The notes beneath the pieces were generated by a model that saw only the letters and a list, made by a program, of their open reading frames with translations, was not told the DNA's origin and did no database searches. Positions 4,270 to 23,669 of a DNA stretch of 64,000 nt are shown one piece after another (the stretch's first letter is position 1; every line of letters starts with the position of its first letter). The DNA lies in the sequence record MK250017.1; one strand, 5' to 3'. The position numbers were made by a program, and so were the translations under genes.

Positions 4270-5003
4270 AGTCATATATAATTTATTTTAAACTTATCTA
4301 TTAAACTTTCAATTCTATACAAAATTTCAAAAGTACTTGAATAATACTCAGTCTAATAGAAATATCATTATCTAATTTTAATTATAATAGATATAAATTA
4401 AAAAATAATTTTTAATATCTATCTTTAACTTAATACTATATATTAATTATACTACAATATTTATAAAAAGTTTATATTTACTAATAAATTTTAAAAAATA
4501 ATTTAATAAATAAAAAATATTTACATTTCCGAAAGACTTACCTTACTAAATTCATTAAATTATTAAAAATTATAAATAAATTTTTTCATATATTTATATA
4601 TAGATCTATCACAANNNNNNNNNNNNNNNNNNNNNNNNNNNNTGAGTTCTGAGAAAAAGTCTACATTTTTTCTAAATATTTTTAATGAATTCTAAAAATA
4701 ATTCATAACTAATTAATATTCAATAAATTAAATAAAATATTTTTCATATAATTTTCATATAAATTAATATAAAATAAAAATTCAGATCTAAATTAATATA
4801 AATTTAAATCTGAATTAAAAATTAAATTTTTTATATACTATATATAATATCTATCTCAANNNNNNNNNNNNNNNNNNNNNNNNNNNNNNNNNNNNNNNNN
4901 NNNNNNNNNNNNNNNNNNNNTTATTTTTTAACTATTTTTAATGATATTTTTTTAAACTTTACAAATAATATCTAATATAACTATAGAAAATTAATTTAAT
5001 TTA
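4270..5003. other. very AT-rich non-coding divergence region with two N-gaps and a hairpin
   Basis: No credible ORF; lies between divergent genes; AATTCAGATCTAAATT / AATTTAAATCTGAATT near 4779-4816 pairs at 15 of 16 positions. Confidence 0.5.
4954..4981 (+). promoter_or_regulatory. putative middle-class promoter (AAAC-N18-TATAAC)
   Basis: AAACTTT 4954 and TATAAC 4976; same 22-nt offset as more than 10 other sites. Confidence 0.5.
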
Positions 5004-7826: not shown

Positions 7827-8876
7827 ATGAAGAAGTTTATTTTTATGCTTATTGCAATGTTTACATTTGCAATTGGTTCAATTAACGCACAGACACAGAA
7901 TGACTATGCAGGTTCTAGTAAGTTTACTGATAATGTTTCAGTAACACTTCAGGGTGGTGTTCTTACATCATTTGATAATTTTTATAGTGGTCATACTGCA
8001 ATGGCACCTATTGTTTTGATTGGCGCAGATAAGTATGTAACCCCTTGGTTGGGATTTGGTGTAGAAGGTCGTACACTTATTGGTACAGGTCATGGTAGTT
8101 ATAATACATATACTGCTTTTGATTATGTTAATGTAAGTGGTCTTGTAAAGGTTAATCTTGCTAATGCATTTAAGTTTGATGGAACACGTAAGTTCTTTGA
8201 GCCTGTTGTTTATACAGGTCTTGGTTGGGGACATCAGACAGCAAGTTATGGAGATAATCACAATAATTGGATGACTTATCGTGCAGGTGCAGAGTTTAAT
8301 TTTAATCTTGGTGAGGATCGTGCATGGGGTATTGTTGTAAATCCATCAGTTGTTTGGAATGACATTGACAATGGTAAGCTTGTAAAGAAGAACGGTAGTT
8401 TTGAGATTACAGCAGGTGTTGTTTATCGTTTCAAGAATTCAAATGGAAAGCGTTCATTTGCTAAGGCACATCTTTATGATGCAGCAGAGGTTGCAGCTCT
8501 TAACAAGAAGATTAATGAGCTTGAATCACGTGAACCTGTTGTAATTGAGAAGATTGTAGAGAAGCCTGTTGCAACTAATACTGTTGCAGGTGTTGGCTCA
8601 AATGTGTTTATTGCTCCATTTAAGTTTAATAGTTCTGAGCTTTCTGATAAGTGTAAGTCAGTACTTGATAATATTGCAGAGGGCACAACAGTTGTAATTG
8701 ATGCATATGCATCTTCTGAGCCAAAGAGTTCTGCAAAGTATAATACAAAGCTTTCTGTAGAGCGTGCAAATGCAGTTAAGAAGTATCTTGAGTCACGTGG
8801 CGTTAAGGTAACAGATACCACTGGACATGGTATAGATGATGATTTTGGTCGTGTTGCTATTGTTACTGTAAAGTAA
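7827..8876 (+). CDS. ompA: Bacteroidota-type OmpA family outer membrane protein (349 aa)
   Basis: Signal peptide MKKFIFMLIAMFTFAIGSINA; amphipathic beta-strands ending AGVVYRF; compact OmpA_C domain YASSE...YNTKLSVERANAVKKYL. Confidence 0.85.
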   Translation: MKKFIFMLIAMFTFAIGSINAQTQNDYAGSSKFTDNVSVTLQGGVLTSFDNFYSGHTAMAPIVLIGADKYVTPWLGFGVEGRTLIGTGHGSYNTYTAFDYVNVSGLVKVNLANAFKFDGTRKFFEPVVYTGLGWGHQTASYGDNHNNWMTYRAGAEFNFNLGEDRAWGIVVNPSVVWNDIDNGKLVKKNGSFEITAGVVYRFKNSNGKRSFAKAHLYDAAEVAALNKKINELESREPVVIEKIVEKPVATNTVAGVGSNVFIAPFKFNSSELSDKCKSVLDNIAEGTTVVIDAYASSEPKSSAKYNTKLSVERANAVKKYLESRGVKVTDTTGHGIDDDFGRVAIVTVK

Positions 8877-8948: not shown

Positions 8949-8965
8949 ATTTTATAATAATTGTG

Positions 8966-8973
8966 TATCTTTG
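8966..8973 (+). promoter_or_regulatory. Bacteroidota-type -7 element TATCTTTG
   Basis: GTGTATCTTTG upstream of 9010 gene. Confidence 0.65.
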
Positions 8974-9009
8974 TAATATAATATATTGTTTAAACAGAAG
9001 TTATTTAAT

Positions 9010-9336
9010 ATGATAAAATTTAAAAATCAAACATCAAATAATACTATATCATCAGATGTAATTAAAGATTTAATAGATACATTACCAACTACAAAATCAC
9101 CAATATTTAAAACGAAGAATTTTACTATTCGTGATTTACGTATTGGAAGTATTATACGTATTCATTTATGTAATGATTCCCGTGGTGATAAAGGATATGT
9201 TACAACAGAAATTGTTGCATTATTTAATTCAATGGGACAACATATATATAATTCTAATGCAGATTTTGCAATTGTATATGAAGGTATAGTATGGACTGCA
9301 AATTGTACACAAATAGATAAAATAATTTCGTATTAA
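9010..9336 (+). CDS. hypothetical protein (108 aa)
   Basis: ATG 9010 within track ORF 8986-9336. Confidence 0.65.
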   Translation: MIKFKNQTSNNTISSDVIKDLIDTLPTTKSPIFKTKNFTIRDLRIGSIIRIHLCNDSRGDKGYVTTEIVALFNSMGQHIYNSNADFAIVYEGIVWTANCTQIDKIISY

Positions 9337-9360
9337 TTTTTTTATTCAAAAATAAATGTG

Positions 9361-9368
9361 TATCTTTG
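9361..9368 (+). promoter_or_regulatory. Bacteroidota-type -7 element TATCTTTG
   Basis: GTGTATCTTTG 30 nt upstream of ATG 9398. Confidence 0.65.
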
Positions 9369-9397: not shown

Positions 9398-9823
9398 ATG
9401 AATAAGATTTTTATAACATTGATTTTTAGTTTTGTATGTATGTTTGCTAATGCAACATCACATAATAAATTACATATCGGATATGATAAAGATATGTGTA
9501 GCGATTATTATGTTCTTTCTATAAAGAAAGATACTGTATACGTTACATATTATGAATATGAACAAGGTACATTTGTATATTATGATGGTTTAAATGATTT
9601 TGCATCATCACGCCTTACACCATTGATGAATAAATTGGTTAATATTCATACAAAAAAAGTTAATAAGATTAAAAATGAATATGAAAATCTTCTTATTGAT
9701 ATTAATGTAGTAAATCCTACATATCATAAATGTAAAAATAATTATATTGCATTTTATGAAATGGGTATATTATATAATAAAATAGGAAATCTTATTGATA
9801 AAGTAAAAAAAATTACAAAATAA
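9398..9823 (+). CDS. putative exported protein (141 aa)
   Basis: Signal-peptide-like MNKIFITLIFSFVCMFANA. Confidence 0.7.
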   Translation: MNKIFITLIFSFVCMFANATSHNKLHIGYDKDMCSDYYVLSIKKDTVYVTYYEYEQGTFVYYDGLNDFASSRLTPLMNKLVNIHTKKVNKIKNEYENLLIDINVVNPTYHKCKNNYIAFYEMGILYNKIGNLIDKVKKITK

Positions 9824-9831
9824 AAATAATT

Positions 9832-10005
9832 ATGGAAGTTAATATTACAGAAGAAAAGTTTAAAGCATATAGAGAATTACAAAATTCTGGAGAAATTAAT
9901 ATGCTTGATTATATTAATGGATGTAAACTTACTGGTCTTAGTAAAGAAGAGTATATTGATATTATCCATAATTATAATACATATAGAGAAAAATTTAATA
10001 TTTAA
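9832..10005 (+). CDS. small hypothetical protein (57 aa, below the track cut-off)
   Basis: MEVNITEEKFKAYRELQNSGEINMLDY...; ATG-TAA fills the intergenic gap. Confidence 0.65.
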   Translation: MEVNITEEKFKAYRELQNSGEINMLDYINGCKLTGLSKEEYIDIIHNYNTYREKFNI

Positions 10006-10023
10006 TTATAAAAATTATATTTC

Positions 10024-10545
10024 ATGAGTAAAGTATTTTATCCTACAAATCTTGGAGGTATGTCAATTAATTGGGTTGACTATCTTGGAAGTACGAAGAA
10101 TTCTACAAATAAGAGTGAACTGCTTATTGACCATATTGCAACAATGAGTAATGAAAATAATGGTAAAGATGTTTATATGAATTTCTTTGAAGAGATTGAT
10201 CGTATAGATGATGAGACTGCACAGAATCAATATAAGACATTTTTGCGAATTAATATTACAGAAGCTATTAAGCATGATCTTGAGTGGATGGAAATGAATA
10301 ATAAAAGTATCAATGATCCAACGAATTCACATTATATTAATCTTGAGTCTTTGAGTATTACTGATATTGATGTTAATGATGATTTTAAGTTCATTCGAAT
10401 TCATTATGATTTTTGTCAGAATCATTTTGCATGTTCATGTAGTCGTCGTAGAATGGTAGGTGCTGTATATCGTTTGCATGCACTAACTTCTAATAAGAAT
10501 GAATTGTTTGCATGTTCATGGGATGGACCTATTGTTTTTTGGTAA
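10024..10545 (+). CDS. hypothetical protein (173 aa)
   Basis: ATG-TAA ORF. Confidence 0.75.
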   Translation: MSKVFYPTNLGGMSINWVDYLGSTKNSTNKSELLIDHIATMSNENNGKDVYMNFFEEIDRIDDETAQNQYKTFLRINITEAIKHDLEWMEMNNKSINDPTNSHYINLESLSITDIDVNDDFKFIRIHYDFCQNHFACSCSRRRMVGAVYRLHALTSNKNELFACSWDGPIVFW

Positions 10546-10565
10546 AATTAAATTTAAATAGATAT

Positions 10566-10775
10566 ATGATTAACATTAATGATTTAACAGATAACGAAAA
10601 ATATATTTTTACACAAGGTTATGAACAGGGACAAAAAGAAAGTCTTGAAAATTATGATAATATTGAAAAGATTATAGATGCATATCTTGTAGTAAAACAT
10701 GAATGTCAAAATAAAGATTTCATGGAAAGACATGACTTTATTTCACTTGTTATCGATAAGACAAAACAAATTTAA
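10566..10775 (+). CDS. hypothetical protein (69 aa)
   Basis: ATG 10566 within track ORF 10512-10775. Confidence 0.6.
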   Translation: MININDLTDNEKYIFTQGYEQGQKESLENYDNIEKIIDAYLVVKHECQNKDFMERHDFISLVIDKTKQI

Positions 10776-10813
10776 GTTAATATAAATTATAGAATTAAAA
10801 TAAAAGATATATT

Positions 10814-12079
10814 ATGCCTATTATTTAGAAAACAAAGTATTCATATAATGATTTGACTATTGAGCCTGCAGTAATTAGTTCAATTAAGAGTAGGAAGGAA
10901 TGTGATCCATATGAGCGTATGGATGTAAATATGAGAGATTATCTTCCGTTGTTTACTGCACCAATGTCTACTATTGCAAATGAACATAATTTTAATATAT
11001 GGAAGAAGAATAAAATTATGCCTATGTTGCCACGAAATATTGGTGCTGATCCAAATGGAAGTATTGATAAACGAATTAGTTATATCAAAGATTTTCTTGA
11101 TAATGGTGATTGGGTTGCGTTGTCACTTAAGGAATTTGAATATGTTTTTGTAGAACATAAGATGATGAGTCCTGGACAAATCTTTCCTGGTTATAATCGA
11201 ACATATAGAGTATGTGTAGATTTGGCTAATGGTCATATGGAATGTCTATATGATACAATTAATAAAGCGAAGGAAATTGCAAGAAATGACAATTATAAAC
11301 TTATTGTAATGACAGGAAATATTGCAAATTCTGAAACATATAGATGGATTTGCAAACATGCTGAAGTTGATTATATTAGATTGTCTGTGGGAAGTGGATC
11401 AAATTGTATTACGGCTACGCAGACCTCTGTTCATTATCCTATTGCATCATTAATTGATGAATGTAAGTATATAAAGAATGTATACGAAGGTAAATCTTAT
11501 GCTAAATCAACACCTTATATTATTGCTGATGGTGGTGTTAGAGGATATGCAGATGTTATTAAGGCTATTGCTCTTGGTGCAGATTATGTAATGATTGGTA
11601 GTTTGTTTACAGGATTACTTGAATCTGCTGCACCTCTTGATATTGAGTGTTATAATTCACATTATAAGTATGGATATGCAGCAGGTATTATTAATGATGG
11701 TATTAATAATATTCTTAATCTTTGGGATAGTCTTGAAGATGAAGATGATAATGATACATTAGTACCAATTGATAATAAAGAATTGGAGCAGAAGAAGAAA
11801 GATTTCATTAAGGATATGAAAGATATTGTAAAGGAATCTTATGGTATGTCTACAAAGAAGGCTCAGAAGTTGATTAATCCAAATGCAAAGTCAAAGACTT
11901 CTGAAGGATGTACGAAGTATATTCATGTAAAGGAAACTGTTAAGCAGTGGTCAGATAATATGATAGATTATTTCAGGTCAGCAATGAGTTATACAAATAA
12001 GAAATATATTAATGATTTCAGAGGAAAAGTAGATCTGATTATTAATAGTTCATCTGCAATTCTTGCAGTAAATAAGTAA
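10814..12079 (+). CDS. IMP dehydrogenase / GMP reductase family enzyme (421 aa, TAG at codon 5)
   Basis: MPII-TAG-KTKYSYNDLTIEP restores the N-terminal YxDxxIxP motif; catalytic loop GSGSNCIT; IIADGG; ALGADYVMIGS; YGMST; SEG. Confidence 0.85.
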
Positions 12080-12105
12080 ATAATTTTATTCATCATTTTA
12101 ATATT

Positions 12106-12143
12106 AGGATGGAATACTTAATTATGAGTATTTCATCCTTTTT
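12106..12143 (+). terminator. intrinsic terminator
   Basis: AGGATGGAATACTTA / TGAGTATTTCATCCT followed by T-run. Confidence 0.75.
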
Positions 12144-12145
12144 TA

Positions 12146-12152
12146 ATAAATA
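12146..12152 (+). promoter_or_regulatory. putative late promoter ATAAATA
   Basis: Motif starts 30 nt before ATG 12176; same heptamer 28-34 nt before ATGs at 14478, 17165, 47854, 54570, 56678. Confidence 0.5.
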
Positions 12153-12175
12153 TATAAAAAGAAAAATTACCTAAT

Positions 12176-14374
12176 ATGTCAAAAATAAAGAATTATCAAA
12201 AGTTAGATAAAAATTCTGTATTTAATAATTGTAGTTATGCATAGTCAGCAGGTGTTTATTATAATTAGGAAGGTTTTTCTAATGTAACAAATAAAATTTA
12301 GGATATGGGAACATATAATCCTGATAAGTATATATTAGGAAATATAACTAAACCAAATAAGAAGACATTTGTTAATTATGATAAACATGAAATAATTAAT
12401 AAAGGAAATAATACAAAAATTAACATTAATAATATAAAGAATAATAAGGAAACATATGCGTATGTTTCTGGTATTATGGTTCCTACTATTGAAGCAGAAG
12501 TAAAACCTATTACAGAAATATTAAAAGAAACTGAAAATAATATTACAAATTCAAAAAATATAGTTATTAATAGTAAAGAATTTAAAGAATTACATAAAGA
12601 AGAAAAAGTTATTAATAATAAAGACGTTAAACAAGTAAAAAGTAAATCATCTGTAAATTTATTTTCTAAAGTATTTGAAAATAAACAATAGAATGATATT
12701 AATGATATTAATGATGATAATGTAATATATTTAAATGGTTGGGTATGGTTAAATAGATTTAATAAACCATATGCACATAATTTTGGTGATGATATAAATT
12801 TTTCATTTTTGACAGAAATAACAGGTAAGAAACATAAGAAATACGATAATGAATTTGTAACAAATTATTTAATGATTGGAAGTATTTTTATTGATAAGTA
12901 TATAAATGATTTTACAGAAGTATGGGGTAGTGGAATGTTAAGACATTAGGTATTATATAAAAAACCAAATAAAGTATATGCAGTTAGAGGTCCAAAAACA
13001 CGAGAGATCTGTTTAGCATCAAATATAGATTGTCCGGAAATATATGGAGATCCTGCATTATTAATACCATATTACTATTATCCTTATGTAATGAAAAAAT
13101 ATAAATTAGGAATTATTCCACACCATTCTCATATTAATTCAGATATATTAAATAAATTTAAAGATAATAAAAATATTAAGATTATTAATTTTACAAAATA
13201 TAATGATTGGAAAGATATAATTAAAGAAATTGTAGAATGTGAATTTATTATATCTGAAAGTTTACATGGTTTGATTATATCAGAAGCATTTAGAATTCCT
13301 AATATATGGATTTCATTAGGAAATAATATAGGATAGAATTTGAAATATGAAGATTTCTTTTTATCTATTAATAAACCATTATATGATTCATATTTAGTAA
13401 ATGAAGATACAACATATGAAGATTTATTAAAATTAAAAGATAATTATAATTCAACATTTGAAATAGATTTACAAAAATTAGTTGATGCTTGTCCTATAAA
13501 ATTAAAGAATTTAAATTTATATAATCAGATTAAACCATATACAGGAAAAGTATTATTATGCTGTATAGGAAAAATGGAAAATAATTATATACGAGAGTTT
13601 GTAGAATATTATAAAACAATAGGATTTGATAATATATGTTTATATGATAATAATGATATAGATGGAGAACATTTTGAGGATGTAATAGGTGATTATATAG
13701 ATTCAGGATTTGTAATATTAAAAGATTGGAGAGGAAAAGAATTAGCATAGATTCCATCATATACAGATTGTTATAATACATATAAAGATGAATATGATTG
13801 GATTGCATATTTTGATATAGATGAATTTTTAGATTTAGCTTGTAATAATATAAAAGAATTCTTATCTGATGATATGTATAATGATAAAGGTATAAATTGT
13901 ATAAGAGTTTGCTGGAAACAATTTACTGATTCTAATATTATTAAAACAGATGGAAATTATTCAGTAACTAAATTTAATCAATATATACCATTAGATAAAG
14001 ATAAATATTGTGCATAGACAAAAATTATAATTAAAACGTAGTTAGATAATATCATATTTGATTCACCACATGGTGTTATATATAATAAAGATTGCCATAT
14101 TACATGTGTAAATACAAATGGTGATTTATGTACAAATGATATAATTATAAATAATCCTACATGGGAAAATGCATGTTTAAATCATTATCGTTTTAGAACA
14201 ATAGAGGAATATGTATTAAATAAAATGGTAAGATTATGGCCAACAACATATATGAATGGTGGAAAAACGGGATTAAATTTAAATTTATTTTTTAGATATA
14301 ATACATTTTCATAGGAAAAATTAGATTTTGCAAATTATCTTTTAGATAAATATAATATAAGTAGAAATGAATAA
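12176..14374 (+). CDS. polysaccharide pyruvyltransferase / glycosyltransferase fusion (732 aa, 10 TAGs)
   Basis: One frame through track ORFs 12305, 13091, 13340. Pyruvyltransferase motifs HNFGDD, IGS, VWGSG, AVRGPKTR, YGDPALL, LGIIPH, SESLHGLI; then GT motifs ENNYIREFVEYY, LYDNND, WIAYFDIDEF. Confidence 0.85.
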
Positions 14375-14446
14375 ATGAAAATAAAAGAGCAATTAAATAT
14401 TTTTATATAGTGCAAAATTATATAGAATATTAATTGCTCTTTTTTG

Positions 14447-14453
14447 ATAAATA
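14447..14453 (+). promoter_or_regulatory. putative late promoter ATAAATA
   Basis: 31 nt before ATG 14478. Confidence 0.5.
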
Positions 14454-14477
14454 TAAAAAATAACATGTTATATTTAA

Positions 14478-15443
14478 ATGAATAAAGATATACGTCCACC
14501 TCAGCATGTATTACATGTTTTCGATCCTAATAGAAAATGTAGACCACATGATGAAGTTGAGTTTATAGAAGGTCGTTATGTTGATATTGTAAATGCAAAG
14601 AATAAGGATCCACATACTTTGTATTTCGGTAAATCAAAGAATTCTGAACTCTTAACAGGTATTTTTTTAGGTGATCTTGAACTTACTTCAAAAGTAAAAG
14701 ATGTATCTCTTGTTTCTGTTGATGGTGTTGTAACATTATCTATTAAATATGTTAATTCTGCTGGTAAACTTGCAACAGTAAAAACAAATTTACCTTCATA
14801 GAAACTTGTTGAAGATATTAAAAAATTCTTAGAGGATTTTGATACAAGTATTCTTGATAAAATTAACACATCATTCAGTGATGTATATGATAGATTAAAT
14901 GTTATCGATTCATCAATAGTTGATATTAATAATCATCTTACAGTTATAGATACTTCTGTAGGTGAATTAACAACAAGAGTAGATACATTAGATACATCAT
15001 TATTAGGATTAATAGATGAACTTGATCATGGTAAGTATAATTATACAATACATGAAGATCCTGGAACATATGCAAACGGTTTCAAAAAAACATTTACTTT
15101 ATTTAAAGGTGAAGAAGAACAAAAAGATTCATCTAAGATTGAAGTAACTGATATGGTGTTGAAATAGTTAAATTATGTTAAAGATAATAATGTAATTGAA
15201 GCAAAAGTTTGGCCAGAACCTATTAAGTCAATCGATTTAATCGGTGATGTTCTTACATTAAAAGATGGTACAGTTATTAAAGATGTTATTTCATCTCTTG
15301 ATAAAGATTTAATTAAAACTGTATCATTAGACATGAAAGGTTATGACGAACATATTAATGACTTCATGAATACTGATTCATCTATTAATGACAGATTAAC
15401 TTTTGTAGAAAACCAATTGAAATGGGAAGAGTTAGATAAATAA
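14478..15443 (+). CDS. fibre-like structural protein, WEEL paralogue 1 (321 aa, 2 TAGs)
   Basis: Read-through of TAG 14799-14801; lD[TS]S[VIL] coiled-coil repeats; ends QLKWEELDK. Confidence 0.65.
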
Positions 15444-15487
15444 AAAAAGAGAAAATAAATAATAAAATTAAATCTATTAAATTTAAT

Positions 15488-17062
15488 ATGAATAAAAATA
15501 TGGTTTATGGTGCTAATGAAGCAACTTCTTTAACTGATAAAGTTGCAGATTTTACAAAGGGTAAAAACATTCACTTTGGTTCTGGTGCATTTGAAGAATA
15601 GAAAGTTGTTGCTATTGCAACAGCAGCTGAATCTGATGCAAAGGTTCGTTTCGTATATGATGCAATAGGTGATTCTGGTATGGTATTTGTTGGTAATCAA
15701 CTTGCATCTTCTAAGATTCTTGACATTACAACAAATAAAGTAGCAAAGAAACATTTTGATCCTGAAACTGGTAATTATGTAGAATCAACTACAGAAAAAG
15801 TTGCAACTAAGGTAACAGTTACATGGTTTGGTTCTCAGGAAGATCCAAAAGATAATGTTGTAAAGACACAGACATGGACTACTGTATTTGATGTTATTGA
15901 TACAGATACAGTAAAAGCAATGATTGATAAAGCTTCAGCAGATTTAAATAAATCAGTTGATGATTTAAAAACAAAGCATGAAGCAGACGTTTTACGTTTA
16001 GATACATCAGTTAACGGCATTGAGACACTTCTTAAGCGCGATGTAGTTTCAGCTGACACTGGTAGTGCACTTACAGTAACTCCTACTTCTGCTGATGCAA
16101 CAGGTTATAAGACTTATAAGGTTGCAGTTAACGTAGATGATGCAAAAGGTTCAACTATTAAGGTTGTAGATAATAAGATTAAGATTGCAAAGTATGCAAT
16201 TAAGCAGGTTGCTGCGGATTCTATGGAAAAAGATGCAGATACTAATGAAACAAAGTATGCATCTGAATATCAGTTAATGATGACTGATGCTGATGGTGTT
16301 ACAAAGGCAGTTGGTGATAAGATTAACATTGCAAAAGACTTCTTAGTAACTAAGGCACATGTATGTACATTTAAGTATGTTGCTGAAAATGGCGCAGAAA
16401 TTAAGTATGATGTACAACTTGAAGATCAATGGGGTAATTCTCCAGCAGTTAAATATGGAGATGAAGTAACATCAGAAAATCAGCTTCCATGGTCTAAGAA
16501 TCAGGATGGTACATGGGAACAAGCACGTCTTGGTTTCGGTATTAAGTATGGTCATTCATATTTACACTTAGTTATCAATACTAAGCCAACTAATACAAAA
16601 GCTGCTAGACTTGATGATGTTTATCTTGATTTTACAGAAATCTTTACAACATTCAAGGGTGATGATAAATTCATCAAGGTTGAGAATGGCGTTGTTTCTT
16701 TGGATATTGATGCTGTTTCATCTAAAGTTGATGAAAAACTTAAGGTTAATGATACATTCACAGAACTTAAGGCAAAAGATGAAGCAATTGAAGGTCGTCT
16801 TAATGGATTAGATACATCTGTAAGCAATATTGAGAAATCATATGTAACAGATGCATCTCTTGAAGCGCCAAAGGCAGATAATGCACAGTTCAATACTTTA
16901 AAGATTACAAATCATAAAGTTGTTGATGGTGTTGCAAAAGACACAGAGGTTACTGTAGATGTTGCAAATGAAAAATATTATGCAGGATTAAATACAGCAT
17001 TAAATACACTTACAGAAAATGATAAACATCTTTCTGCACTTCTTACATGGGAAGAACTCTAA
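15488..17062 (+). CDS. fibre-like structural protein, WEEL paralogue 2 (524 aa, TAG at codon 38)
   Basis: ATG 15488 joins track ORF 15680; module ASSKILDITT; ends LLTWEEL. Confidence 0.7.
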
Positions 17063-17089
17063 TTAATTTTTAATTAACTTTAATAATAT

Positions 17090-17128
17090 AATGGGATAAC
17101 TGATAATAATTCAATTATCCCATTTTTT
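17090..17128 (+). terminator. intrinsic terminator
   Basis: AATGGGATAA / TTATCCCATT followed by T-run. Confidence 0.75.
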
Positions 17129-17130
17129 AG

Positions 17131-17137
17131 ATAAATA
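17131..17137 (+). promoter_or_regulatory. putative late promoter ATAAATA
   Basis: 34 nt before ATG 17165. Confidence 0.5.
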
Positions 17138-17164
17138 AAATAAAATATAAACTTTATTAATAAT

Positions 17165-18880
17165 ATGGCTATTACTATTAAAAAGTCAATGATTAATGGT
17201 GCTCCAGTTATTTTTGGCACTCCTGCTGATGCAGATACTGCAAAAGGTGTAGAAGTAAAATTTGGTTATGGTACACTTGAGAATGTACTTGCAAAAGTTG
17301 GTACTGCAGATGACGGCGTAATCTATTTCGGTTATGATGATGCTAAATCAACTGGTGCAATTGTTTCACGCGGTAAACTTGTTTCTTCTAAAATTCTTGA
17401 TATTACAACAACTGCTGCTGTAACAGGAGAAGGTGATAAAGTAACAAAAGAAGCATAGATTGTAATTTCTTATATTGATACTGATAAGTCTGTTAAAACA
17501 TTGGAAATTCCTGTTTCTGCTGATGGTAAATTAAAAGAACTTGCTGATAAGATTGAAGATCTTAAAACATTAGTAGGTACAAAGACAGATACTAAAGATA
17601 CTGATACAGTATTCGGTGCAATTGCAAAAGAAACAGATCGTGCAACTACTAAAGAAACTGCAATTTCCGATCTTCTTGGTACTGTTGATGATGTTGCTGG
17701 TACTGCAACTGCATTTGGAAAGATTGCTGATGAAACAAAGCGTGCAACTGATGTTGAAGGTAAGTTAGATACTCGTGTAACTAATATTGAAACACTTATA
17801 GGTGATGCAGAAAAGCCAGATGAAGATACAGTAATCAATAAAGTAACTGAAGTAATTGATTGGTTCAAAGGTGTTTCTGAAACCGAAAAAGGTGCAACAC
17901 TTATTTCTGATGTTGCTGCTAATAAAACAGCTATTGGTACAAAAACTGTAGAAAATACTAATAGCATTTATAAGAGAATTGAAGATCTTGAAGCAAAGAA
18001 ACACACAGTAAGTGACGTAGTTGCTGATGCTGGTAAATGTGTATCAGGTGTTCATGTTGATGAAAACGGTGCATTAACAATTGATCAAGCTGAATTAGCT
18101 GCTACTAATATTAATGCTACTGCAATTGTAGCAGGTGATGATACTGTTGCAGTTGAAGGTGATAAGGTTGCTTCATAGATTGAAAGTTTAGCTAAGTCTA
18201 TTAAGACTGCTACAAAGTCTGCTGATGATGCAATTAAGGCACTTGATGTTACAGATACTGCAGTAGAAGGAAAATATGTTTCTGCTGTTTCTGAAGAAGA
18301 TGGTAAGATTACAGTTACACGTGCAGATCTTCCTACACTTTCTGTTAAGACAGGTTCAGAACAATTTGCAGCTGTTAATAACCATGAAGTTGAAATCAAG
18401 ACTACTGCATTAAATACTGTTGGACTTACAAAGACTGATGCCGGTAAATGGCAAGCAGGTACTGCTGATGCAAAATCAACTGGTCTTGCAACTGCTGCAG
18501 ATGTTGCCGCAGAAATCGTATCAGATGAAGAGGTTATTGCAACAGCTCTTAATGACCATGAAAATCGTTTAAAGACAGTAGAAGGTAAAGAAATTACTGT
18601 TTCTTCTGCTAAGTCTGATGTTGCTATTTCTGTTGCAGAAGTAAAAGATAACGATGTTGTTACTACAGCTGCAACTAATTTCAATGTTACAACTGGTAAA
18701 GTTACATTTACTATTCATAATGGTGATAAAGATGTTGCAGAAACAATTACTGCATATACAGAAGATACTGTTAAAGCTCTTGTTGAACTTTATGCAAAGG
18801 AAAAAGCTCGTGCTGAAGCTGCAGAAGCTGGTCTTGATAAGAGATTAACTTGGGTTGAATTGAATAAGCAAGACAAATAA
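17165..18880 (+). CDS. fibre-like structural protein, WEEL paralogue 3 (571 aa, 2 TAGs)
   Basis: Joins track ORFs 17165 and 17501 and continues to TAA 18878; VSSKILDITT; ExxRAxxxExxL repeats; GKYVSAVSEEDGKITV; ends RLTWVEL. Confidence 0.72.
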
Positions 18881-18900
18881 TAATTTAACATAAATTTAAA

Positions 18901-18936
18901 ATGAGACTTAAAGTCAGACTTAAGTCTCATTTTTTT
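18901..18936 (+). terminator. intrinsic terminator
   Basis: ATGAGACTTAA / TTAAGTCTCAT followed by T-run. Confidence 0.85.
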
Positions 18937-18982
18937 ATATAAACTCTAAACAAACAGTGTTTAATTTTAACATAAGAGTATT

Positions 18983-19633
18983 ATGGATCAAATTACAAAA
19001 GAAAGAAATAAACAAGAGTTTATAGAGTTATTGAGAAGTACAAAAAGAGAAGGTATTGAAGATTTAATTAACTGGTTATCAGAGAAGTCTGATTTCTTTG
19101 AAGCTCCATCATCTACAATTTACCATTGTAATTATCCTGGAGGTCTTTGCCAACATTCACTTAACGTTTATTATGCAGCACGAGACTTCTATGAGACTTA
19201 TAAGAAACTATCTCTGCCAGAGAAAAATGTAGAGTCTATCCCAATGGAATCTATTATCATAACTGCACTTCTTCATGATTTATGTAAAGCAAATAACTAT
19301 AAGATTGTTGAGAAGTTTAAGAAAGATGAATCAAACCAATGGTTCAAATACTATTCATATCAGATTGATGAAAAACTTCCACTCGGTCATGCTCCTAAAT
19401 CTATTTTTATTGCACAAACATTTATCAGACTTTCAGGTGAAGAATTATGCGCGATTATGTGGCATATGGGAATGTCAGATATTGGTGCATGGATGAGTAA
19501 TTACCAAAAACCTTCTATGCAAACATCATATACAAAAGTTCCACTTTCTGTATTAATTATGCAAGCAGACTTTTTCGCTTCATACTGTATGGAAAAAGAA
19601 GTAGATCAAACTGTTGAATGCAGAATTGGTTAA
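18983..19633 (+). CDS. HD-domain phosphohydrolase, YhaM-like (216 aa)
   Basis: EAPSS.IYH.NYPGGL.QHSLNV, LLHDLCK, GH, WHMG. Confidence 0.85.
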   Translation: MDQITKERNKQEFIELLRSTKREGIEDLINWLSEKSDFFEAPSSTIYHCNYPGGLCQHSLNVYYAARDFYETYKKLSLPEKNVESIPMESIIITALLHDLCKANNYKIVEKFKKDESNQWFKYYSYQIDEKLPLGHAPKSIFIAQTFIRLSGEELCAIMWHMGMSDIGAWMSNYQKPSMQTSYTKVPLSVLIMQADFFASYCMEKEVDQTVECRIG

Positions 19634-19637
19634 AAAT

Positions 19638-19676
19638 AAAAGAGAGATTAAATTGTTGATATTTAATCTCTCTTTT
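19638..19676. terminator. bidirectional terminator between convergent genes
   Basis: Perfect 16-bp inverted repeat AAAAGAGAGATTAAAT. Confidence 0.8.
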
Positions 19677-21318
19677 TATATATTAAATATGGTGAATAAC
19701 ATTTTAAATAATCTTCCCTAATATCATCTTTATTACAATTTAGAAATTCTTTTAACATACTTTTATTAAATCTAAATTCACTACGTTTATAATTATAATA
19801 ATTTAATGTAAATTTAATTTTATCTGATTCTAATTTAAAATTTAATGTTTCATATAATTTTATATTATCAGTTTCTAAATTACAATTAACAATAATAGAA
19901 TTATAAGTATAATTACATTTAAAATAATTTAATAATAGTTTTTCACAACCTATCACATATAAATTATTTTTATAACAAATTCTATTTAATATATAATTAT
20001 TATCTGATATATTACTAAATGTCATACAACATAATAATTCATTATTCTTAAATAATCCTAATTTTATATCAGACTCAATATAATTATCAATATGATAAGT
20101 ATTTATAAAATCTTTACATATATTTTCATCTAATTCTTTAATGATACAATTATCTGAAAATACTTTCTGCTCAAGATGACAACTTCTTAATATAATATTT
20201 TCTATTTTATCTATATTATAATGAATATCATCTTCCCTAAATGTCAACATCTATATATCAGTTTTAGATACTAAATCATATTTTACTTTAAATCTATTCT
20301 TACCATTAATTCCACAATGCCAATAAATTCCATTACATTCTATTGCAACTTTATAATCAGGTAAATAAAAATCAAATTCACGCGGTGATATTATATATCT
20401 AACATGTTGTTCAAACTTTATATTATGTTTCTCCAATAATAATCTTATTTTATATTCTATAGACGTCTCTAAATTTTTTTCTGGATTACATATAGGACAC
20501 ATAACAATATCTTTCTACTATCTATTAAAAAATGTATAATTCTTTATTGAAAATGGATTATGTATTTTACATTGATTATAAACTATAAATTCATTTTTAT
20601 TATCTGAATATTTAATTTCATAACCACGTTTTAACCATTTATTTTCTATTGTTTTATGTTTATTAACTAATTTCTATTTAACATTATTTTCATTCTTATT
20701 CGCACATTCATTAGAACAATAATGTCTAAACCCTTCACTGAATCTATAAAACTTAACATATTTTCCACATGTAGGACATACAGGACTTTTATTAATATGA
20801 TTCTTCATTCGATATAAAATCTCCTGTATAACTGATTTATTCCTCTATAAATCATCATACCTATTCATCATGTAATCATATATACCAAATTGCTTTAACT
20901 TTTTATTTTTACAATATTCAGATATTAATCTGTCATCTTTAATCATTAAATTCAATACATATTCATCATCAATATTTTCTTTCTACTTTACATCAGTTAA
21001 TTTATGTATTTTATTCGGATCATTTAATGAACATTTATATGAACAATATTGATTATAACCATATAAAAATCCTCTGAATAATAAAGGAATCTCTTTACCA
21101 CATGTTTTACAATATAAATGTAAATCATCTGGTAATTTATAATATATCCTATATATGATTTCCTGTATATTTTTTACAGATTTAAATCTATTCATTAAAT
21201 AATCATATAAACCATGATCTTTTAACCATGATTCTTTTATTCTACATGTATTTAATTGAATTTTATTGTTTCTAAATACTGTTAATTTATCTATTATAAT
21301 CTGATCTGCCACTTCCAT
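19663..21318 (-). CDS. free-standing Hef/Vsr-like homing endonuclease (about 551 aa, TAG-rich)
   Basis: Track ORFs 20983, 20251, 19663 share one frame via 6 TAGs (including TAG-TAG); two CxxCG...YCSxxC repeats, CPICN, catalytic EFDFYLPDYKVAIECNGIYWH; start 21318 or 21360. Confidence 0.72.
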
Positions 21319-21354
21319 ATTTTTTATATTAATAAATGTTAAAAATGTTTTAAT

Positions 21355-21382
21355 AAACAAATAACATATTTTACTATATAAT
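21355..21382 (+). promoter_or_regulatory. putative middle-class promoter for the polB-IntN gene
   Basis: AAACAAA 21355 and TATAAT 21377. Confidence 0.6.
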
Positions 21383-21414
21383 TTAAAATTTGAATTAGAA
21401 TTTAATTGAAAAAC

Positions 21415-22221
21415 ATGGAAGAAAAGAAATATAAATTTTGTCAGATAGATCCAAATAATTGTACTGTTGAAGAACTTGAAGAAGAAGTAGAAAGACTTAA
21501 AAACTTAGGTGATTTTTACGAGACTAAACAGTTGGCACTTAAGAAATTTATTAATAGTGTTTACGGAGCAACCGCGAGCAAGTATTTCATTGCACATAAC
21601 ACAGCTGTTGCGGAATCTATTACACTTCAGGGACAGGATTTGAATCATTATTCAGAGAATTCTGTTAATGCATATTTTAGTGGTATATTTCAGAATGATA
21701 CTGAATTGCATAAGAAATTGGGTATTGATTCGGAAAAAGCAAAAAAAGTAAGTATTGCCAAGGGTAAAACAACAGAAACAGGTACGTTAGATGGACCCGA
21801 GTTTTCATATCTTAATGGAAATCAGAGTCTTACTGTTGCTGGAGATACTGATAGCCAAATTGGCTCGACGCAATTCTATGTTGATAATAACATAACTACA
21901 ATGGAAGATTTCTTTACAAAAGCTAAATATGAAAATAATGATGTGGTTATAAAGTTACAAAATGGTTCTGAAGTTGTTCCTGTACATAATCACAATACAT
22001 TAACATATATAGATCATGATTTTAAAACGTCAGAACGCCCTATTAATTATATAATGAGACACAAAGTAACAAAGGATAAGTTCAGATTGAAGACTAAATC
22101 AGGTAAAGAACTTATAGTAACTGGAGATCATAGTATTATGGTTATAAGAAATAATGAATTGATTTCATTACCAGCAAGAGAAATAAAGAACACAGATAAA
22201 ATTATAACATTGGATAAGTAA
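21415..22221 (+). CDS. polB: family-B (T4 gp43-like) DNA polymerase fingers/palm fragment fused to split intein N-half (268 aa)
   Basis: Motif B KKFINSVYG; AESITLQGQ; first half of motif C AGDTD followed directly by the intein; ends at a true TAA 22219-22221; no exonuclease domain or motif A. Confidence 0.9.
   Translation: MEEKKYKFCQIDPNNCTVEELEEEVERLKNLGDFYETKQLALKKFINSVYGATASKYFIAHNTAVAESITLQGQDLNHYSENSVNAYFSGIFQNDTELHKKLGIDSEKAKKVSIAKGKTTETGTLDGPEFSYLNGNQSLTVAGDTDSQIGSTQFYVDNNITTMEDFFTKAKYENNDVVIKLQNGSEVVPVHNHNTLTYIDHDFKTSERPINYIMRHKVTKDKFRLKTKSGKELIVTGDHSIMVIRNNELISLPAREIKNTDKIITLDK
21853..22218 (+). mobile_element. split intein N-fragment (IntN, 122 aa, Ser1, no Cys)
   Basis: Block A SQIGSTQFYV; block B KELIVTGDHSIMV (TxxH); stop after EIKNTDKIITLDK. 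Confidence 0.9.
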
Positions 22222-23339: not shown

Positions 23340-23578
23340 TACCATATCAATCTAAAATAACTATTATAAGAAACAGTAATTTTAAAAAGCATAATACATT
23401 ATTAAATACTTTTTTGAAATTGATAGGAAGTAATTATCGTGATTTATATTATGCATTAAATCATGATTTGAATTGTATTACGATAAATGACAGATCAGAG
23501 ATAAATGATAATCAAATTATATATGCGAAATATTTAGGTATTGACATTATTGATGAATCACTTAAGAGAATTAGTTAA
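23336..23578 (+). CDS. small protein with BRCT-like C-terminus (80 aa)
   Basis: ATGA overlap with the upstream gene; YAKYLGIDIIDES resembles the BRCT KAxxLGIxIIxE helix. Confidence 0.45.
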   Translation: MIPYQSKITIIRNSNFKKHNTLLNTFLKLIGSNYRDLYYALNHDLNCITINDRSEINDNQIIYAKYLGIDIIDESLKRIS

Positions 23579-23618
23579 ATAGTATTATCGTGAAAAGTAT
23601 TTCAATGAAGAAAATAAT

Positions 23619-23646: not shown

Positions 23647-23669
23647 ATATATAATTAACAAAAGAAAAG

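What the first reader, a model, noticed from the sequence alone, without database searches (positions are those of the whole stretch)
12176..14374. Pyruvyltransferase-glycosyltransferase fusion beside fibre genes: possible virion glycosylation
Seen: a 732-aa protein hidden by 10 TAGs, with a low-complexity N-terminus, a polysaccharide pyruvyltransferase domain (about 12720-13520) and a DxD glycosyltransferase domain (about 13540-14374). It shares the putative late promoter with the three fibre-like genes that follow. Known: pyruvylated glycans decorate mimivirus fibrils and bacterial capsules; I know of no such fusion described for phage virions. Inference: builds a pyruvylated glycan on phage fibres or remodels the host surface late in infection.
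Basis: partly seen in the sequence, partly recalled or inferred. Interest (0 to 1): 0.75.

Follow-up and report, generated by a model that had tools for sequence, protein, structure and literature searches.

The report
Lak megaphage pyruvyltransferase-glycosyltransferase fusion enzyme
This gene of the gut megaphage Lak-A1 encodes one protein that joins a sugar-adding enzyme to a pyruvate-adding enzyme; it is real, intact and in the TAG-using gene class thought to be late, but the fusion was already reported, and whether it decorates the phage particle or the host cell surface is still open.

Summary
Window 12176-14374 (+) is a 732-aa ORF with 10 in-frame TAGs, read as Gln. The window is Prevotella phage Lak-A1, a known TAG-to-Gln phage.

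Residues 179-445 are a ketal-pyruvyltransferase domain with its three family motifs intact. Residues 458-725 are a GT92 GT-A glycosyltransferase with an intact DxD. Residues 1-178 are predicted disordered but conserved within Lak.

The fusion is not new. Crisci et al. 2021 list it as a Lak-core, Lak-specific two-domain protein.

- Terminator hairpins flank the gene, and it carries its own T4-late-like RATAAATA motif.
- The three downstream coiled-coil paralogues carry the same motif.
- Every ORF with the motif uses TAG (16 of 16, against 32 of 94 others).
- Some Lak phages have a Stealth phosphotransferase cassette in place of the pyruvyltransferase, in the same slot.
- Other huge gut phages carry the same domain pair in either order.

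No other glycosyltransferase or GalE was found in Lak-A1, so the enzyme probably caps a host-made glycan. My best reading is remodelling of host surface glycan, at about 0.45. There is a tested phage precedent, wbbYZ. Virion-fibre glycosylation remains possible at about 0.25 and is untested.

The parts
12106..12139 (+). Intrinsic terminator hairpin plus U-run that ends the upstream IMPDH/GMP-reductase-like gene (10814-12079)
   Evidence: Found in the scan. RNA fold -18.9 kcal/mol, z -6.0.
12145..12152 (+). AATAAATA promoter-like motif, 31 nt before the ATG. It resembles the T4 late promoter TATAAATA.
   Evidence: Positions. The motif is depleted three-fold in the window (19 matches against 57.8 +/- 7.9 expected). 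All 16 ORFs that carry it use TAG. It is conserved upstream of the fusion in L001, L003, L004, L041, L043 and L039.
12176..14374 (+). 732-aa ORF (P0001) with 10 in-frame TAG codons read as Gln: the bifunctional pyruvyltransferase-GT92 enzyme
12176..12709 (+). N-terminal extension (residues 1-178). N/K-rich and predicted disordered, yet conserved within Lak. It is retained in the Stealth-cassette variant.
   Evidence: pLDDT below 50. 62-91% identity among Lak phages and 70% in P0060. No paralogue elsewhere in Lak-A1.
12710..13510 (+). Ketal-pyruvyltransferase domain (PF04230, GT-B-like). Motifs: NFGDD at 202-206, VRGPKTR at 270-276, SLHG with His at 364.
   Evidence: PF04230 is recorded on the 97%-identical cluster representative. 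Alignment A3. The motifs are defined in PMC10629545. Best specific structural matches are WbbZ 6X1L (Z 10.5) and Pvg1p 5AX7 (Z 9.9). Motif positions.
13547..14350 (+). GT92 (PF01697) GT-A glycosyltransferase domain. DxD is DID at residues 547-549 (nt 13814-13822). The conserved NHY motif is at 669-671.
   Evidence: Alignment A1. The profile hits galactan synthase GalS1 8D3T at E 3e-5 across the DxD. GalS1 is the top structural match by Foldseek (E 5e-8) and by VIA-align (Z 14.4).
14383..14443 (+). Long terminator hairpin plus U-run directly after the fusion's stop codon
   Evidence: RNA fold -22.6 kcal/mol, z -6.4. RNA-library contigs break at 14403 and 14440 (contigs only).
14446..14453 (+). 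GATAAATA motif, 32 nt before the ATG of the first downstream gene
   Evidence: Conserved in L001 and L041.
14478..15443 (+). 321-aa coiled-coil protein (P0256), the first of three paralogues. Ends in LKWEEL.
   Evidence: Faint PHROG tail hits at E about 3e-3. 79% identical in Lak-B.
15488..17062 (+). 524-aa paralogue (P0257). RATAAATA copies lie at 15435-15442 and 15454-15461. There is no terminator before this gene.
   Evidence: 602 homologues, with no Pfam domain on any of the 120 listed. Fold has low confidence, with long helices and beta hairpins.
17090..17137 (+). Terminator hairpin (17090-17124), U-run, then a GATAAATA motif (17130-17137)
   Evidence: z -3.4.
17165..18880 (+). 571-aa paralogue (P0258), rich in Ala and Thr. 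Shares its N-terminal ~200 residues with P0257 (30% identity, E 8e-14). Ends in LTWVEL.
18898..18933 (+). Terminator hairpin that closes the four-gene block. The next gene, an HD hydrolase at 18983, lacks the motif.
   Evidence: z -5.2.

Best explanation
The gene encodes a soluble, bifunctional glycan-capping enzyme of the virulent Prevotella megaphage Lak-A1.

Shown: the protein has a catalytically intact GT92 GT-A glycosyltransferase domain and a catalytically intact PEP-type ketal-pyruvyltransferase domain, behind a Lak-specific disordered N-terminal extension. The gene is a separate transcription unit. It carries a T4-late-like RATAAATA motif and heavy TAG use, which places it in the suppressor-dependent, probably late, gene class.

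Inferred: the GT92 domain adds one hexose, most likely beta-galactose from host UDP-Gal, to a glycan that already exists. The pyruvyltransferase domain then converts that terminal sugar into an anionic pyruvate ketal, using host PEP.

The phage has no other glycosyltransferase or sugar-nucleotide enzyme that I could detect. The bacterial relatives of both domains are enzymes of lipid-carrier-linked surface polysaccharide synthesis. So the most likely acceptor is a host undecaprenyl-PP-linked surface glycan precursor (O antigen, capsule or general O-glycan). Infected Prevotella cells and their debris would then display a pyruvate-capped glycan. That could mask receptors against superinfection or against loss of progeny on debris.

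The confidence of 0.45 is for the whole statement, including the host-glycan target. Confidence in the enzyme identity alone is about 0.9.
For: Enzyme identity:
- Domain identity rests.
- The pyruvyltransferase motifs NxGD, Rxxx(S/T) and His are all present. The DxD is present.
- The model has pLDDT above 90 for residues 179-732.

The phage supplies little else:
- There is one copy of the fusion in the 541-kb genome.
- No GT2-like glycosyltransferase and no GalE were found, with positive controls.

Bacterial relatives work on surface polysaccharides:
- The nearest bacterial relatives of the GT92 domain are in Prevotellaceae and other Bacteroidales (42% identity in Xylanibacter ruminicola).
- That relative lies in a Wzm/Wzt ABC-transporter polysaccharide locus with GT2 and TarF-like genes.
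- Pyruvyltransferase homologues of 32-43% identity occur patchily, in 10 of 201 Prevotellaceae genomes, at bacterial G+C.
- Crisci et al. reached the same conclusion on origin.

Literature:
- WcfO and CsaB need lipid-PP-linked acceptors, and Gal is the sugar most often pyruvylated.
- A phage-borne wbbY-wbbZ pair was shown experimentally to convert host O antigen.

Variation and context:
- A pyruvyltransferase-to-Stealth cassette swap sits at the same slot in otherwise collinear Lak genomes. This fits serotype-like diversification of an anionic glycan cap.
- An OmpA-like envelope gene lies nearby in Lak and near an unrelated phage's fusion.

Regulatory class.
Against: - No acceptor was identified. 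No membrane anchor or lipid-binding element is visible.
- Late-class expression is an odd time to begin remodelling a cell surface through a lipid-linked export pathway.
- Lak phages are thought to be virulent, so classic lysogenic seroconversion does not apply.
- Across Lak A, B, C and the Stealth variant, the gene sits directly upstream of three co-regulated coiled-coil proteins that could be virion fibres.
- In an unrelated huge phage, a glycosyltransferase cluster containing a GT92-pyruvyltransferase-GT92 protein abuts a gp25 baseplate gene and a protein of more than 2,500 aa with BACON domains.
- 'Late' rests on analogy with the T4 promoter and on the link between TAG use and structural genes reported by Devoto et al.. 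It does not rest on timed expression data.
- The searches for other glycosyltransferases covered only GT2-like families, GalE and self-paralogues.
Confidence: 0.45

Rival explanations
1. Virion glycosylation. The enzyme is made together with the three downstream coiled-coil proteins and decorates them, or another virion protein, in the cytoplasm with a pyruvylated sugar. The conserved disordered N-terminal extension would serve as the docking module. The anionic glycan would alter adsorption, mucus binding or immune recognition of the particle.
For: - The same RATAAATA motif precedes the fusion and each of the three paralogues. This holds in Lak-A, Lak-B and the Stealth variant.
- The motif class is strictly TAG-using (16 of 16 ORFs). 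Devoto et al. place most structural genes in TAG-rich regions.
- Synteny with the three genes is conserved across Lak A, B and C.
- The three proteins have heptad-like segments, long predicted helices and a shared C-terminal motif. One has faint PHROG tail hits.
- In another huge phage, the glycosyltransferase cluster sits next to a gp25 baseplate gene and a giant BACON-domain protein.
- The N-terminal extension is kept even when the middle domain is swapped.
- Phage-encoded glycosyltransferases do glycosylate the capsid and tail tube in mycobacteriophages.
Against: - GT92 enzymes and ketal-pyruvyltransferases are known to act on sugars, not on peptides. No priming protein-glycosyltransferase was found in Lak-A1.
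- The three neighbours are not shown to be virion proteins: none of those listed has a Pfam domain, and the one model made is unusable.
- Relatives with a 65%-identical fusion have no homologue of them within 10 kb. The linkage may simply reflect the collinearity of close genomes.
- Homing endonucleases carry the same motif, so the motif does not mark structural genes specifically.
Confidence: 0.25
2. Another glycan acceptor is used. One option is an exported phage or host glycoprotein made through the Bacteroidota general O-glycosylation pathway, for example the nearby phage OmpA-like protein. Another is a secreted exopolysaccharide matrix around infected cells.
For: - An OmpA-like gene lies four genes upstream in Lak, and near the fusion in an unrelated huge phage.
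- A 2026 preprint counts glycosyltransferases among the envelope-associated neighbours of huge-phage OMP genes, and reports that Lak OMP genes are transcribed.
Against: This is pure context. The OmpA-like gene has no in-frame TAG and no RATAAATA within 90 nt of its start, so it is in a different regulatory class. Mechanistically it overlaps the best explanation, because the acceptor is still a lipid-linked glycan.
Confidence: 0.1
3. DNA or nucleotide modification. The enzyme glycosylates and pyruvylates phage DNA bases or a nucleotide, as suggested by its position among nucleotide-metabolism and replication genes.
For: The neighbours include dUTPase, NUDIX, a Pol-beta nucleotidyltransferase, an IMPDH/GMP-reductase-like gene, an HD hydrolase and DNA polymerase B.
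Against: - The gene is insulated by terminators and belongs to a different promoter and TAG class from those replication genes.
- To my knowledge, neither GT92 nor PF04230 has a member that acts on nucleic acid.
- The nearest relatives are polysaccharide enzymes.
Confidence: 0.03

Closest known systems
Phage-borne wbbY-wbbZ O1 locus (Caudovirales BK049963; Kelly et al. 2023, PMC10629545)
   Same: A phage encodes a galactosyl-type glycosyltransferase together with a PEP-dependent pyruvyltransferase. Together they extend and cap a pre-existing host glycan with a terminal pyruvylated Gal. The pyruvyltransferase motifs NxGD, Rxxx(S/T) and His are shared, and WbbZ (6X1L) is the best specific structural match of the Lak domain.
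   Different: In Lak the two activities are fused in one polypeptide. The glycosyltransferase is GT92 rather than the two-module WbbY polymerase. Sequence identity to WbbZ is only about 14% over the structural alignment, so the two are not orthologues. Lak adds a 178-residue N-terminal extension. The host is Prevotella, and the target has not been tested.
Bacteroides fragilis WcfO and Paenibacillus alvei CsaB (PF04230 ketal-pyruvyltransferases)
   Same: Same Pfam family and the same predicted chemistry. WcfO makes 4,6-pyruvyl-Gal on an Und-PP-linked capsule repeat unit in a Bacteroidota host.
   Different: Both are stand-alone bacterial enzymes in capsule or cell-wall polymer loci. The only NCBIfam hit of the Lak protein is a weak partial match to CsaB (E 0.0019, far below the cut-off). 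A profile of the Lak domain finds no PDB sequence.
GT92 beta-1,4-galactosyltransferases, e.g. poplar galactan synthase GalS1 (PDB 8D3T)
   Same: GalS1 is the top profile and structural match. The GT-A fold and the DxD align.
   Different: 11-14% identity. GalS1 is a plant Golgi polymerase with an extra domain. The donor and acceptor of the phage domain are unknown.
Mycobacteriophage virion glycosylation (Che8 gp110, Corndog gp38; Freeman et al. 2023, cited in PMC12363180)
   Same: Phage-encoded glycosyltransferases that act late on virion proteins. This is the model for the rival explanation.
   Different: Different glycosyltransferase families and no pyruvyltransferase. The acceptors there are capsid and tail tube proteins, and the glycans were shown by mass spectrometry. 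Nothing comparable is known for Lak.
The Lak-core 'pyruvyltransferase-like protein [K13665]' of Crisci et al. 2021 (PMC8346664)
   Same: [quoted passage not shown]
   Different: In the passages my term search returned, that paper stops at annotation.

Membership tests
PF04230 polysaccharide ketal-pyruvyltransferases | Significant match to the family model | tested here: met
   PF04230 is precomputed on the cluster representatives at 97% down to 63% identity. More than 5,000 relatives have E below 1e-10, many of them stand-alone ~300-aa proteins that cover residues 180-445. The NCBIfam CsaB model matches only weakly (E 0.0019).
PF04230 polysaccharide ketal-pyruvyltransferases | Conserved motifs NxGD, Rxxx(S/T) and a His (WbbZ numbering N29/G31/D32, R121, H226) | tested here: met
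   N202-F-G204-D205, R271-GPK-T275 and H364 are invariant or nearly invariant in a 22-sequence alignment. The motifs are defined in PMC10629545.
PF04230 polysaccharide ketal-pyruvyltransferases | GT-B-like double Rossmann fold resembling WbbZ and Pvg1p | tested here: met
   Model pLDDT is above 90. 6X1L scores Z 10.5 over 199 aligned residues, and 5AX7 scores Z 9.9 over 215. UDP-GlcNAc 2-epimerases score about the same, as also reported for WbbZ itself.
PF04230 polysaccharide ketal-pyruvyltransferases | PEP-dependent transfer of pyruvate to a sugar acceptor | not testable with these tools
   Needs an enzyme assay.
CAZy GT92 / PF01697 glycosyltransferases | Family model match and GT-A fold closest to a solved GT92 structure | tested here: met
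   PF01697 is recorded on the homologues. The profile hits GalS1 8D3T at E 3e-5. GalS1 ranks first by Foldseek (E 5e-8) and by VIA-align (Z 14.4).
CAZy GT92 / PF01697 glycosyltransferases | Metal-binding DxD and conserved nucleotide-binding residues | tested here: met
   D547-I-D549-E-F, the D491-N-N motif and H670-Y671 are invariant in 18 sequences.
CAZy GT92 / PF01697 glycosyltransferases | Inverting beta-1,4-galactosyltransferase activity with UDP-Gal | not testable with these tools
   Inferred only from the characterised family members.
Phage-encoded host surface-glycan modification modules (wbbYZ-type) | The phage carries a glycosyltransferase together with a pyruvyltransferase | tested here: met
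   Both are fused in one ORF.
Phage-encoded host surface-glycan modification modules (wbbYZ-type) | Orthology to WbbY or WbbZ | tested here: not met
   Similarity is structural only (14% identity). The glycosyltransferase belongs to a different family, GT92. So this gene is an analogue, not a member of that locus type.
Phage-encoded host surface-glycan modification modules (wbbYZ-type) | Changes the host O antigen or capsule when expressed | not testable with these tools
   Needs expression in a Prevotella or Bacteroides host.
Phage virion glycosylation systems | The glycosyltransferase is co-regulated and linked with virion structural genes | tested here: inconclusive
   The motif is shared with three adjacent coiled-coil paralogues, but they are not shown to be virion proteins. 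The linkage is absent within 10 kb in more distant relatives.
Phage virion glycosylation systems | Glycan detected on virion proteins | not testable with these tools
   Needs glycoproteomics of Lak particles.
T4-type late promoters | An AT-rich TATAAATA-like element alone, upstream of late genes and avoided elsewhere | tested here: inconclusive
   RATAAATA lies 20-60 nt upstream of 16 ORFs, all of which use TAG (p 3e-7). It is depleted three-fold overall. Transcription starts, timing and a gp55-like factor were not tested.

The most novel reading that the evidence does not exclude
Lak megaphages decorate their own coiled-coil fibres late in infection with an anionic, strain-variable glycan cap. 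The cap would be pyruvylated galactose in most strains and a sugar-1-phosphate in the strains that carry the Stealth cassette. It would be made by a single fused enzyme that docks through its conserved disordered N-terminus. This would be the first pyruvylated virion glycan in a bacteriophage, and a serotype-like switch on a phage particle.
Probability: 0.22. Interest if true: 0.8.

Novelty: new member of a known kind. Interest (0 to 1): 0.42.

Why it matters
Lak phages are among the largest known phages and are common in the guts of people on non-Western diets and of many animals. Almost none of their Lak-specific core genes has an assigned function.

This gene is one of only three annotatable Lak-specific core families. 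It is a tractable enzyme that could be expressed and assayed without culturing the phage.

Its target would say how a megaphage manipulates surface glycans: those of Prevotella, a keystone gut genus, or those of its own particle.

The pyruvyltransferase-to-Stealth cassette swap suggests ongoing diversification of that glycan.

The strict link between the RATAAATA motif and TAG-using genes gives a concrete, testable handle on how code switching is tied to transcription timing in recoded phages.

Tried and rejected
Searches that came back empty or could not be run:
I sent them to no other remote tool, so two of the three 'fibre-like' proteins were studied only locally.
- The AlphaFold model of P0257, built from a 12-row alignment, was too poor to search with (pLDDT 43).
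- A profile of the pyruvyltransferase domain found no PDB sequence. Whole-protein phmmer against the PDB also found nothing.
- P0001 has no PHROG hit.
- Searching Lak-A1 with a gp25 baseplate protein from L006, to find a bona fide structural gene for a promoter check, found nothing.
- PHROG annotation of ten TAG-using ORFs in the next 50 kb, five of them motif-bearing, gave a transposase, an HNH endonuclease, a protease and ORFans. None is a recognisable structural gene, so 'late' stays an inference.
- The pyruvyltransferase-domain query found nothing in the five genomes that hold GT92 relatives. A family-wide profile search did find bacterial homologues.

RNA evidence:
- Only assembled contigs were available. 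Fragments of the fusion occur in two metatranscriptomic libraries.
- Contigs cannot show level, strand or ends, and DNA carry-over is not excluded. I draw no conclusion about expression.

Ideas rejected:
- One shared operon promoter: terminators separate the units.
- Recent transfer from the host: the gene has 21% G+C and 10 TAG codons, and is at most about 43% identical to bacterial genes.
- The Bacteroidota O-glycosylation sequon D(S/T)(A/I/L/V/M/T) in the repeats of the coiled-coil proteins: by eye, the recurring DTS/DSS triplets do not fit it, and I made no count. That pathway is periplasmic.

Not run: complex prediction, because the report does not claim binding and the partner is poorly modelled.
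Full report
**What the window is.** Bases 10000-20000 of the window are 100% identical to Prevotella phage Lak-A1 (MK250015, 541,664 bp). They are 97-99% identical to Lak-A2 and Lak-C1, and about 76% to the Lak-B genomes. Lak phages are published as using code 15 (TAG read as Gln), with a CTA suppressor tRNA and RF2. No tRNA lies in the window itself. Reading TAG as Gln is therefore justified by the genome, not merely convenient. Within this gene, the TAG at residue 525 aligns with a Gln that is invariant in 18 homologues, including standard-code ones. The TAGs at 23 and 31 fall in the conserved motifs SYAQ and YYNQ.

**The observation.** The ORF at 12176-14374 (+) has 732 codons, 10 in-frame TAGs and a TAA stop. 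Ten of its 17 Gln codons are TAG. Its G+C is 21% and its GC3 is 9%, the lowest third-position G+C in the window (shared with a homing-endonuclease ORF) and among the lowest overall G+C.
- The word-indexed homology search found 525 relatives. The closest, at 97% down to 63% identity, all carry PF04230 (PS_pyruv_trans) plus PF01697 (Glyco_transf_92). They sit on contigs of 525-554 kb, the size of Lak genomes.
- An exhaustive HMMER search found 10,890 relatives. Many are stand-alone ~300-aa proteins that cover either residues 180-445 or residues 458-725.
- The AlphaFold model has pLDDT above 90 for residues 179-732 and below 50 for residues 1-178.

**Pyruvyltransferase domain (residues 179-445).** It has the three motifs that Kelly et al. 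define for glycan pyruvyltransferases: N202-x-G204-D205, R271-xxx-T275 and H364. Its best specific structural matches are the two solved pyruvyltransferases, WbbZ 6X1L (Z 10.5) and Pvg1p 5AX7 (Z 9.9). UDP-GlcNAc 2-epimerases score alongside them, as was reported for WbbZ itself.

**GT92 domain (residues 458-725).** It has an invariant DxD (D547-I-D549) and an invariant NHY motif. Its profile hits poplar galactan synthase GalS1, a GT92 enzyme (8D3T), at E 3e-5 across the DxD. GalS1 is also the top structural match (Foldseek E 5e-8; VIA-align Z 14.4).

**N-terminal extension (residues 1-178).** It is not junk. It is 62-91% identical among Lak A- and B-type phages and has short invariant motifs.

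**Already known.** Crisci et al. 2021 list 'a pyruvyltransferase-like protein [K13665]' as one of only three annotatable Lak-specific core families. They note its two domains and that both are most similar to Prevotella proteins. Devoto et al. mention a Lak glycosyltransferase implicated in LPS synthesis. So the fusion itself is not a discovery.

**Surroundings and regulation.** Most of the window is a replication and nucleotide-metabolism module. It holds dUTPase, NUDIX, a nucleotidyltransferase, an IMPDH/GMP-reductase-like gene, an HD hydrolase, DNA polymerase B split by an intein and an HNH gene, a nucleotide kinase, a Thg1-like enzyme, DnaB, an RNA ligase and NrdD. These genes use almost no TAG. 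The fusion is insulated from them.
- A strong terminator hairpin plus U-run precedes it (12106-12139, z -6.0). Another follows it (14383-14443, z -6.4).
- Right after each U-run comes a RATAAATA motif, about 30 nt before the next ATG. It lies at -31 for the fusion and at -32, -34 and -35 for the three downstream genes.
- The motif resembles the T4 late promoter TATAAATA. That comparison is from my own knowledge.
- The motif is depleted three-fold in the window: 19 matches against 57.8 +/- 7.9 in shuffles. Six of the 19 lie within 12145-17137.
- Over 114 kb of Lak-A1 (the window plus the next 50 kb), all 16 ORFs of at least 100 aa that carry the motif 20-60 nt upstream contain in-frame TAG. Among the other ORFs, 32 of 94 do (Fisher p 3e-7). 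None of the 20 base-permuted control motifs matched this 16:0 split; those with the strongest TAG bias either overlap the real motif or mark very few ORFs.
- The motif is conserved at about -30 upstream of the fusion in Lak-B, in the Stealth variant, in more distant TAG-recoded relatives and in one standard-code huge phage.
- By contrast, two TAG-free small genes upstream (8986, 9398) carry TGTGTATCTTTG, which fits the Bacteroidota -7 element TAnnTTTG (the consensus is from my own knowledge).

So the fusion and its three neighbours belong to one regulatory class that depends on TAG suppression. Devoto et al. report that most structural genes lie in TAG-rich regions, so 'late' is a reasonable inference. 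It remains unproven: homing endonucleases carry the motif too, and I could not annotate a recognised structural gene behind the motif.

**The three 'fibre-like' genes.** P0256 (321 aa), P0257 (524 aa) and P0258 (571 aa) are paralogues.
- P0257 and P0258 share their N-terminal ~200 residues (30% identity, E 8e-14).
- All three end in L(T/K)W(E/V)EL, and none has an obvious signal peptide by eye.
- They have 20-62 heptad-like windows each, against 2 in the enzyme.
- They have no Pfam domain. The only PHROG matches are faint tail hits for P0256 (E about 3e-3).
- The P0257 model is unusable (pLDDT 43), though it predicts helices of 24-48 residues between beta hairpins.

They may well be fibres, but that is not shown.

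**Comparative evidence.**
- The order IMPDH-like gene, fusion, 321-aa, ~515-aa and ~594-aa genes is conserved in Lak-B type contigs.
- One Lak variant (L041) is collinear with Lak-B at 84-85% nucleotide identity, except for 1.5 kb inside the ORF. There, a Stealth_CR2 domain replaces the pyruvyltransferase domain, while the N-terminal extension (70%) and the GT92 domain (79%) are kept. Stealth proteins are hexose-1-phosphate transferases of capsule synthesis. So the alternative cassette also adds an anionic substituent.
- TAG-recoded relatives with 60-65% identical fusions have different neighbours within 10 kb: a Stealth gene and LRR_5 genes, or an extra GT92 gene and a glucosaminidase. None has a homologue of the three paralogues in that range.
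- Fusions in the reverse order (GT92 then pyruvyltransferase, sometimes with a GT2 domain) occur on other phage-like contigs. One lies beside Amidase_3 and OmpA genes.
- A standard-code huge phage has GT25, GT92-DUF4422 and GT92-pyruvyltransferase-GT92 genes directly upstream of a gp25 baseplate gene and a BACON-domain protein of more than 2,500 aa.

**Origin.**
- The nearest bacterial relatives of the GT92 domain are in Prevotellaceae and other Bacteroidales (42% identity in Xylanibacter ruminicola). That gene lies in a Wzm/Wzt polysaccharide locus with GT2 and TarF-like genes.
- Pyruvyltransferase homologues of 32-43% identity, at 40-56% G+C, occur in 10 of 201 sampled Prevotellaceae genomes.

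**What else the phage brings.** In the whole Lak-A1 record there is only one copy of either domain. There is no match to two GT2-type PHROG families and none to GalE, with positive controls. The enzyme must therefore use host UDP-sugar and PEP. With a single transferase of a glycan-acting family, it probably extends a glycan that already exists.

**Mechanism.** Shown: an intact GT-A glycosyltransferase fused to an intact pyruvyltransferase, in a TAG-dependent regulatory class. Inferred: the GT92 domain adds a hexose, probably beta-Gal, because the characterised GT92 enzymes are beta-1,4-galactosyltransferases (my own knowledge). Gal is by far the most commonly pyruvylated sugar, and B. fragilis capsule A carries 4,6-pyruvyl-Gal. 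The pyruvyltransferase domain would then cap that sugar.

The open question is the acceptor.
- *Host glycan (about 0.45).* WcfO and CsaB require lipid-PP-linked acceptors. WbbZ caps an O antigen. A phage-borne wbbY-wbbZ pair was shown to be functional on host O antigen. Together with the bacterial ancestry and the lack of a priming transferase, this makes a host lipid-linked surface glycan the most parsimonious acceptor.
- *Virion glycosylation (about 0.25).* It is favoured by the late-class signature, the conserved adjacency to co-regulated coiled-coil proteins, the retained N-terminal extension and the baseplate-adjacent cluster in another phage. There is a precedent in mycobacteriophages.
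- *DNA modification (about 0.03).* It is unlikely, because the gene is insulated from the replication genes and regulated differently.

**Expression data.** Only assembled contigs were available. Two metatranscriptomic libraries hold short fragments of the gene, and in one the contigs break at 14403 and 14440, the terminator/promoter junction. Contigs cannot show ends, strand or level, and DNA carry-over is possible. This is not evidence of transcription.

**Verdict.** The object is a known Lak-core gene and a new member (a fused form) of a known kind: phage-encoded glycan-modifying enzyme pairs. The parts I found in none of the papers read are the terminator-plus-RATAAATA unit structure tied to TAG use, the in-slot cassette swap from pyruvyltransferase to Stealth, and the breadth of GT92 and pyruvyltransferase combinations in huge gut phages.

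The N runs in the window (4615-4642, 4860-4920, 35340-35363) were left untouched, and no copy of those stretches was fetched.

Noticed in passing
window 12145-17137, 47825, 52320, 54537, 56649; L044 (Lak-A1 468664-518663): A RATAAATA motif 20-60 nt upstream of the ATG marks only TAG-using ORFs: 16 of 16, against 32 of 94 other ORFs (Fisher p 3e-7). It is depleted three-fold overall. It resembles the T4 late promoter and may be the transcriptional side of the code switch in Lak.
   Followed up: partly
window 8961-8972 and 9356-9367: TGTGTATCTTTG, which fits the Bacteroidota -7 element TAnnTTTG, precedes two TAG-free small ORFs (8986-9336 and 9398-9823). These are possibly early promoters read by the host RNA polymerase.
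   Followed up: no
L041 4620-6095 compared with L001 10414-11327: In an otherwise collinear Lak genome (84-85% nucleotide identity), a Stealth_CR2 cassette replaces the pyruvyltransferase domain inside the same ORF. The N-terminal extension and the GT92 domain are kept.
   Followed up: yes
window 19663-24644: DNA polymerase B is in pieces (21406-22221 with an intein N-terminal region, 22221-23339, 23670-24644). A TAG-rich HNH homing endonuclease lies on the opposite strand (19663-21360).
   Followed up: no
window 47854-48792, 54570-55469, 56678-57739: Three homing endonucleases lie around the NrdD gene (52362-54437). They are TAG-rich, with 3-6 TAGs and up to 86% of Gln codons as TAG. They carry the same RATAAATA motif, so this class is not limited to structural genes.
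   Followed up: partly
window 7827-8876; L037 10552-11757: An OmpA-like peptidoglycan-binding protein lies four genes upstream of the fusion in Lak. Another lies beside a GT92-pyruvyltransferase-GT2 fusion in an unrelated huge phage. This may be a recurring envelope module.
   Followed up: no
L001 4283-5416; L044 5203-6330 (-): Lak-B carries an IS605 OrfB/TnpB (Cas12f-like) gene between the Pol-beta and OmpA genes, a slot that is empty in Lak-A1. Another transposase in Lak-A1 has 8 in-frame TAGs, so it is adapted to the phage code.
   Followed up: no
window 34341-35183 and 37753-39291: A Thg1-like tRNA-His guanylyltransferase and an RNA ligase lie close together. This looks like a tRNA repair set.
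   Followed up: no
window 10814-12079: A 421-aa IMPDH/GMP-reductase-like protein lies directly upstream of the fusion. It scores far below every NCBIfam equivalog cut-off (best 94 bits, against a cut-off of 344 for that model). Its substrate is unclear.
   Followed up: no
window 59801-62842 (-), 62845-63903 (-), 1-978 (-): TAG-rich minus-strand genes sit at both ends of the window: a 1013-aa ORFan with 18 TAGs, a 352-aa protein with a faint tape-measure hit, and an open-ended ORF with 9 TAGs. These may be the edges of structural modules.
   Followed up: no
window 4615-4642, 4860-4920, 35340-35363: Three runs of N, left as they are. The third lies inside the DnaB-like gene (35307-36803).
   Followed up: no
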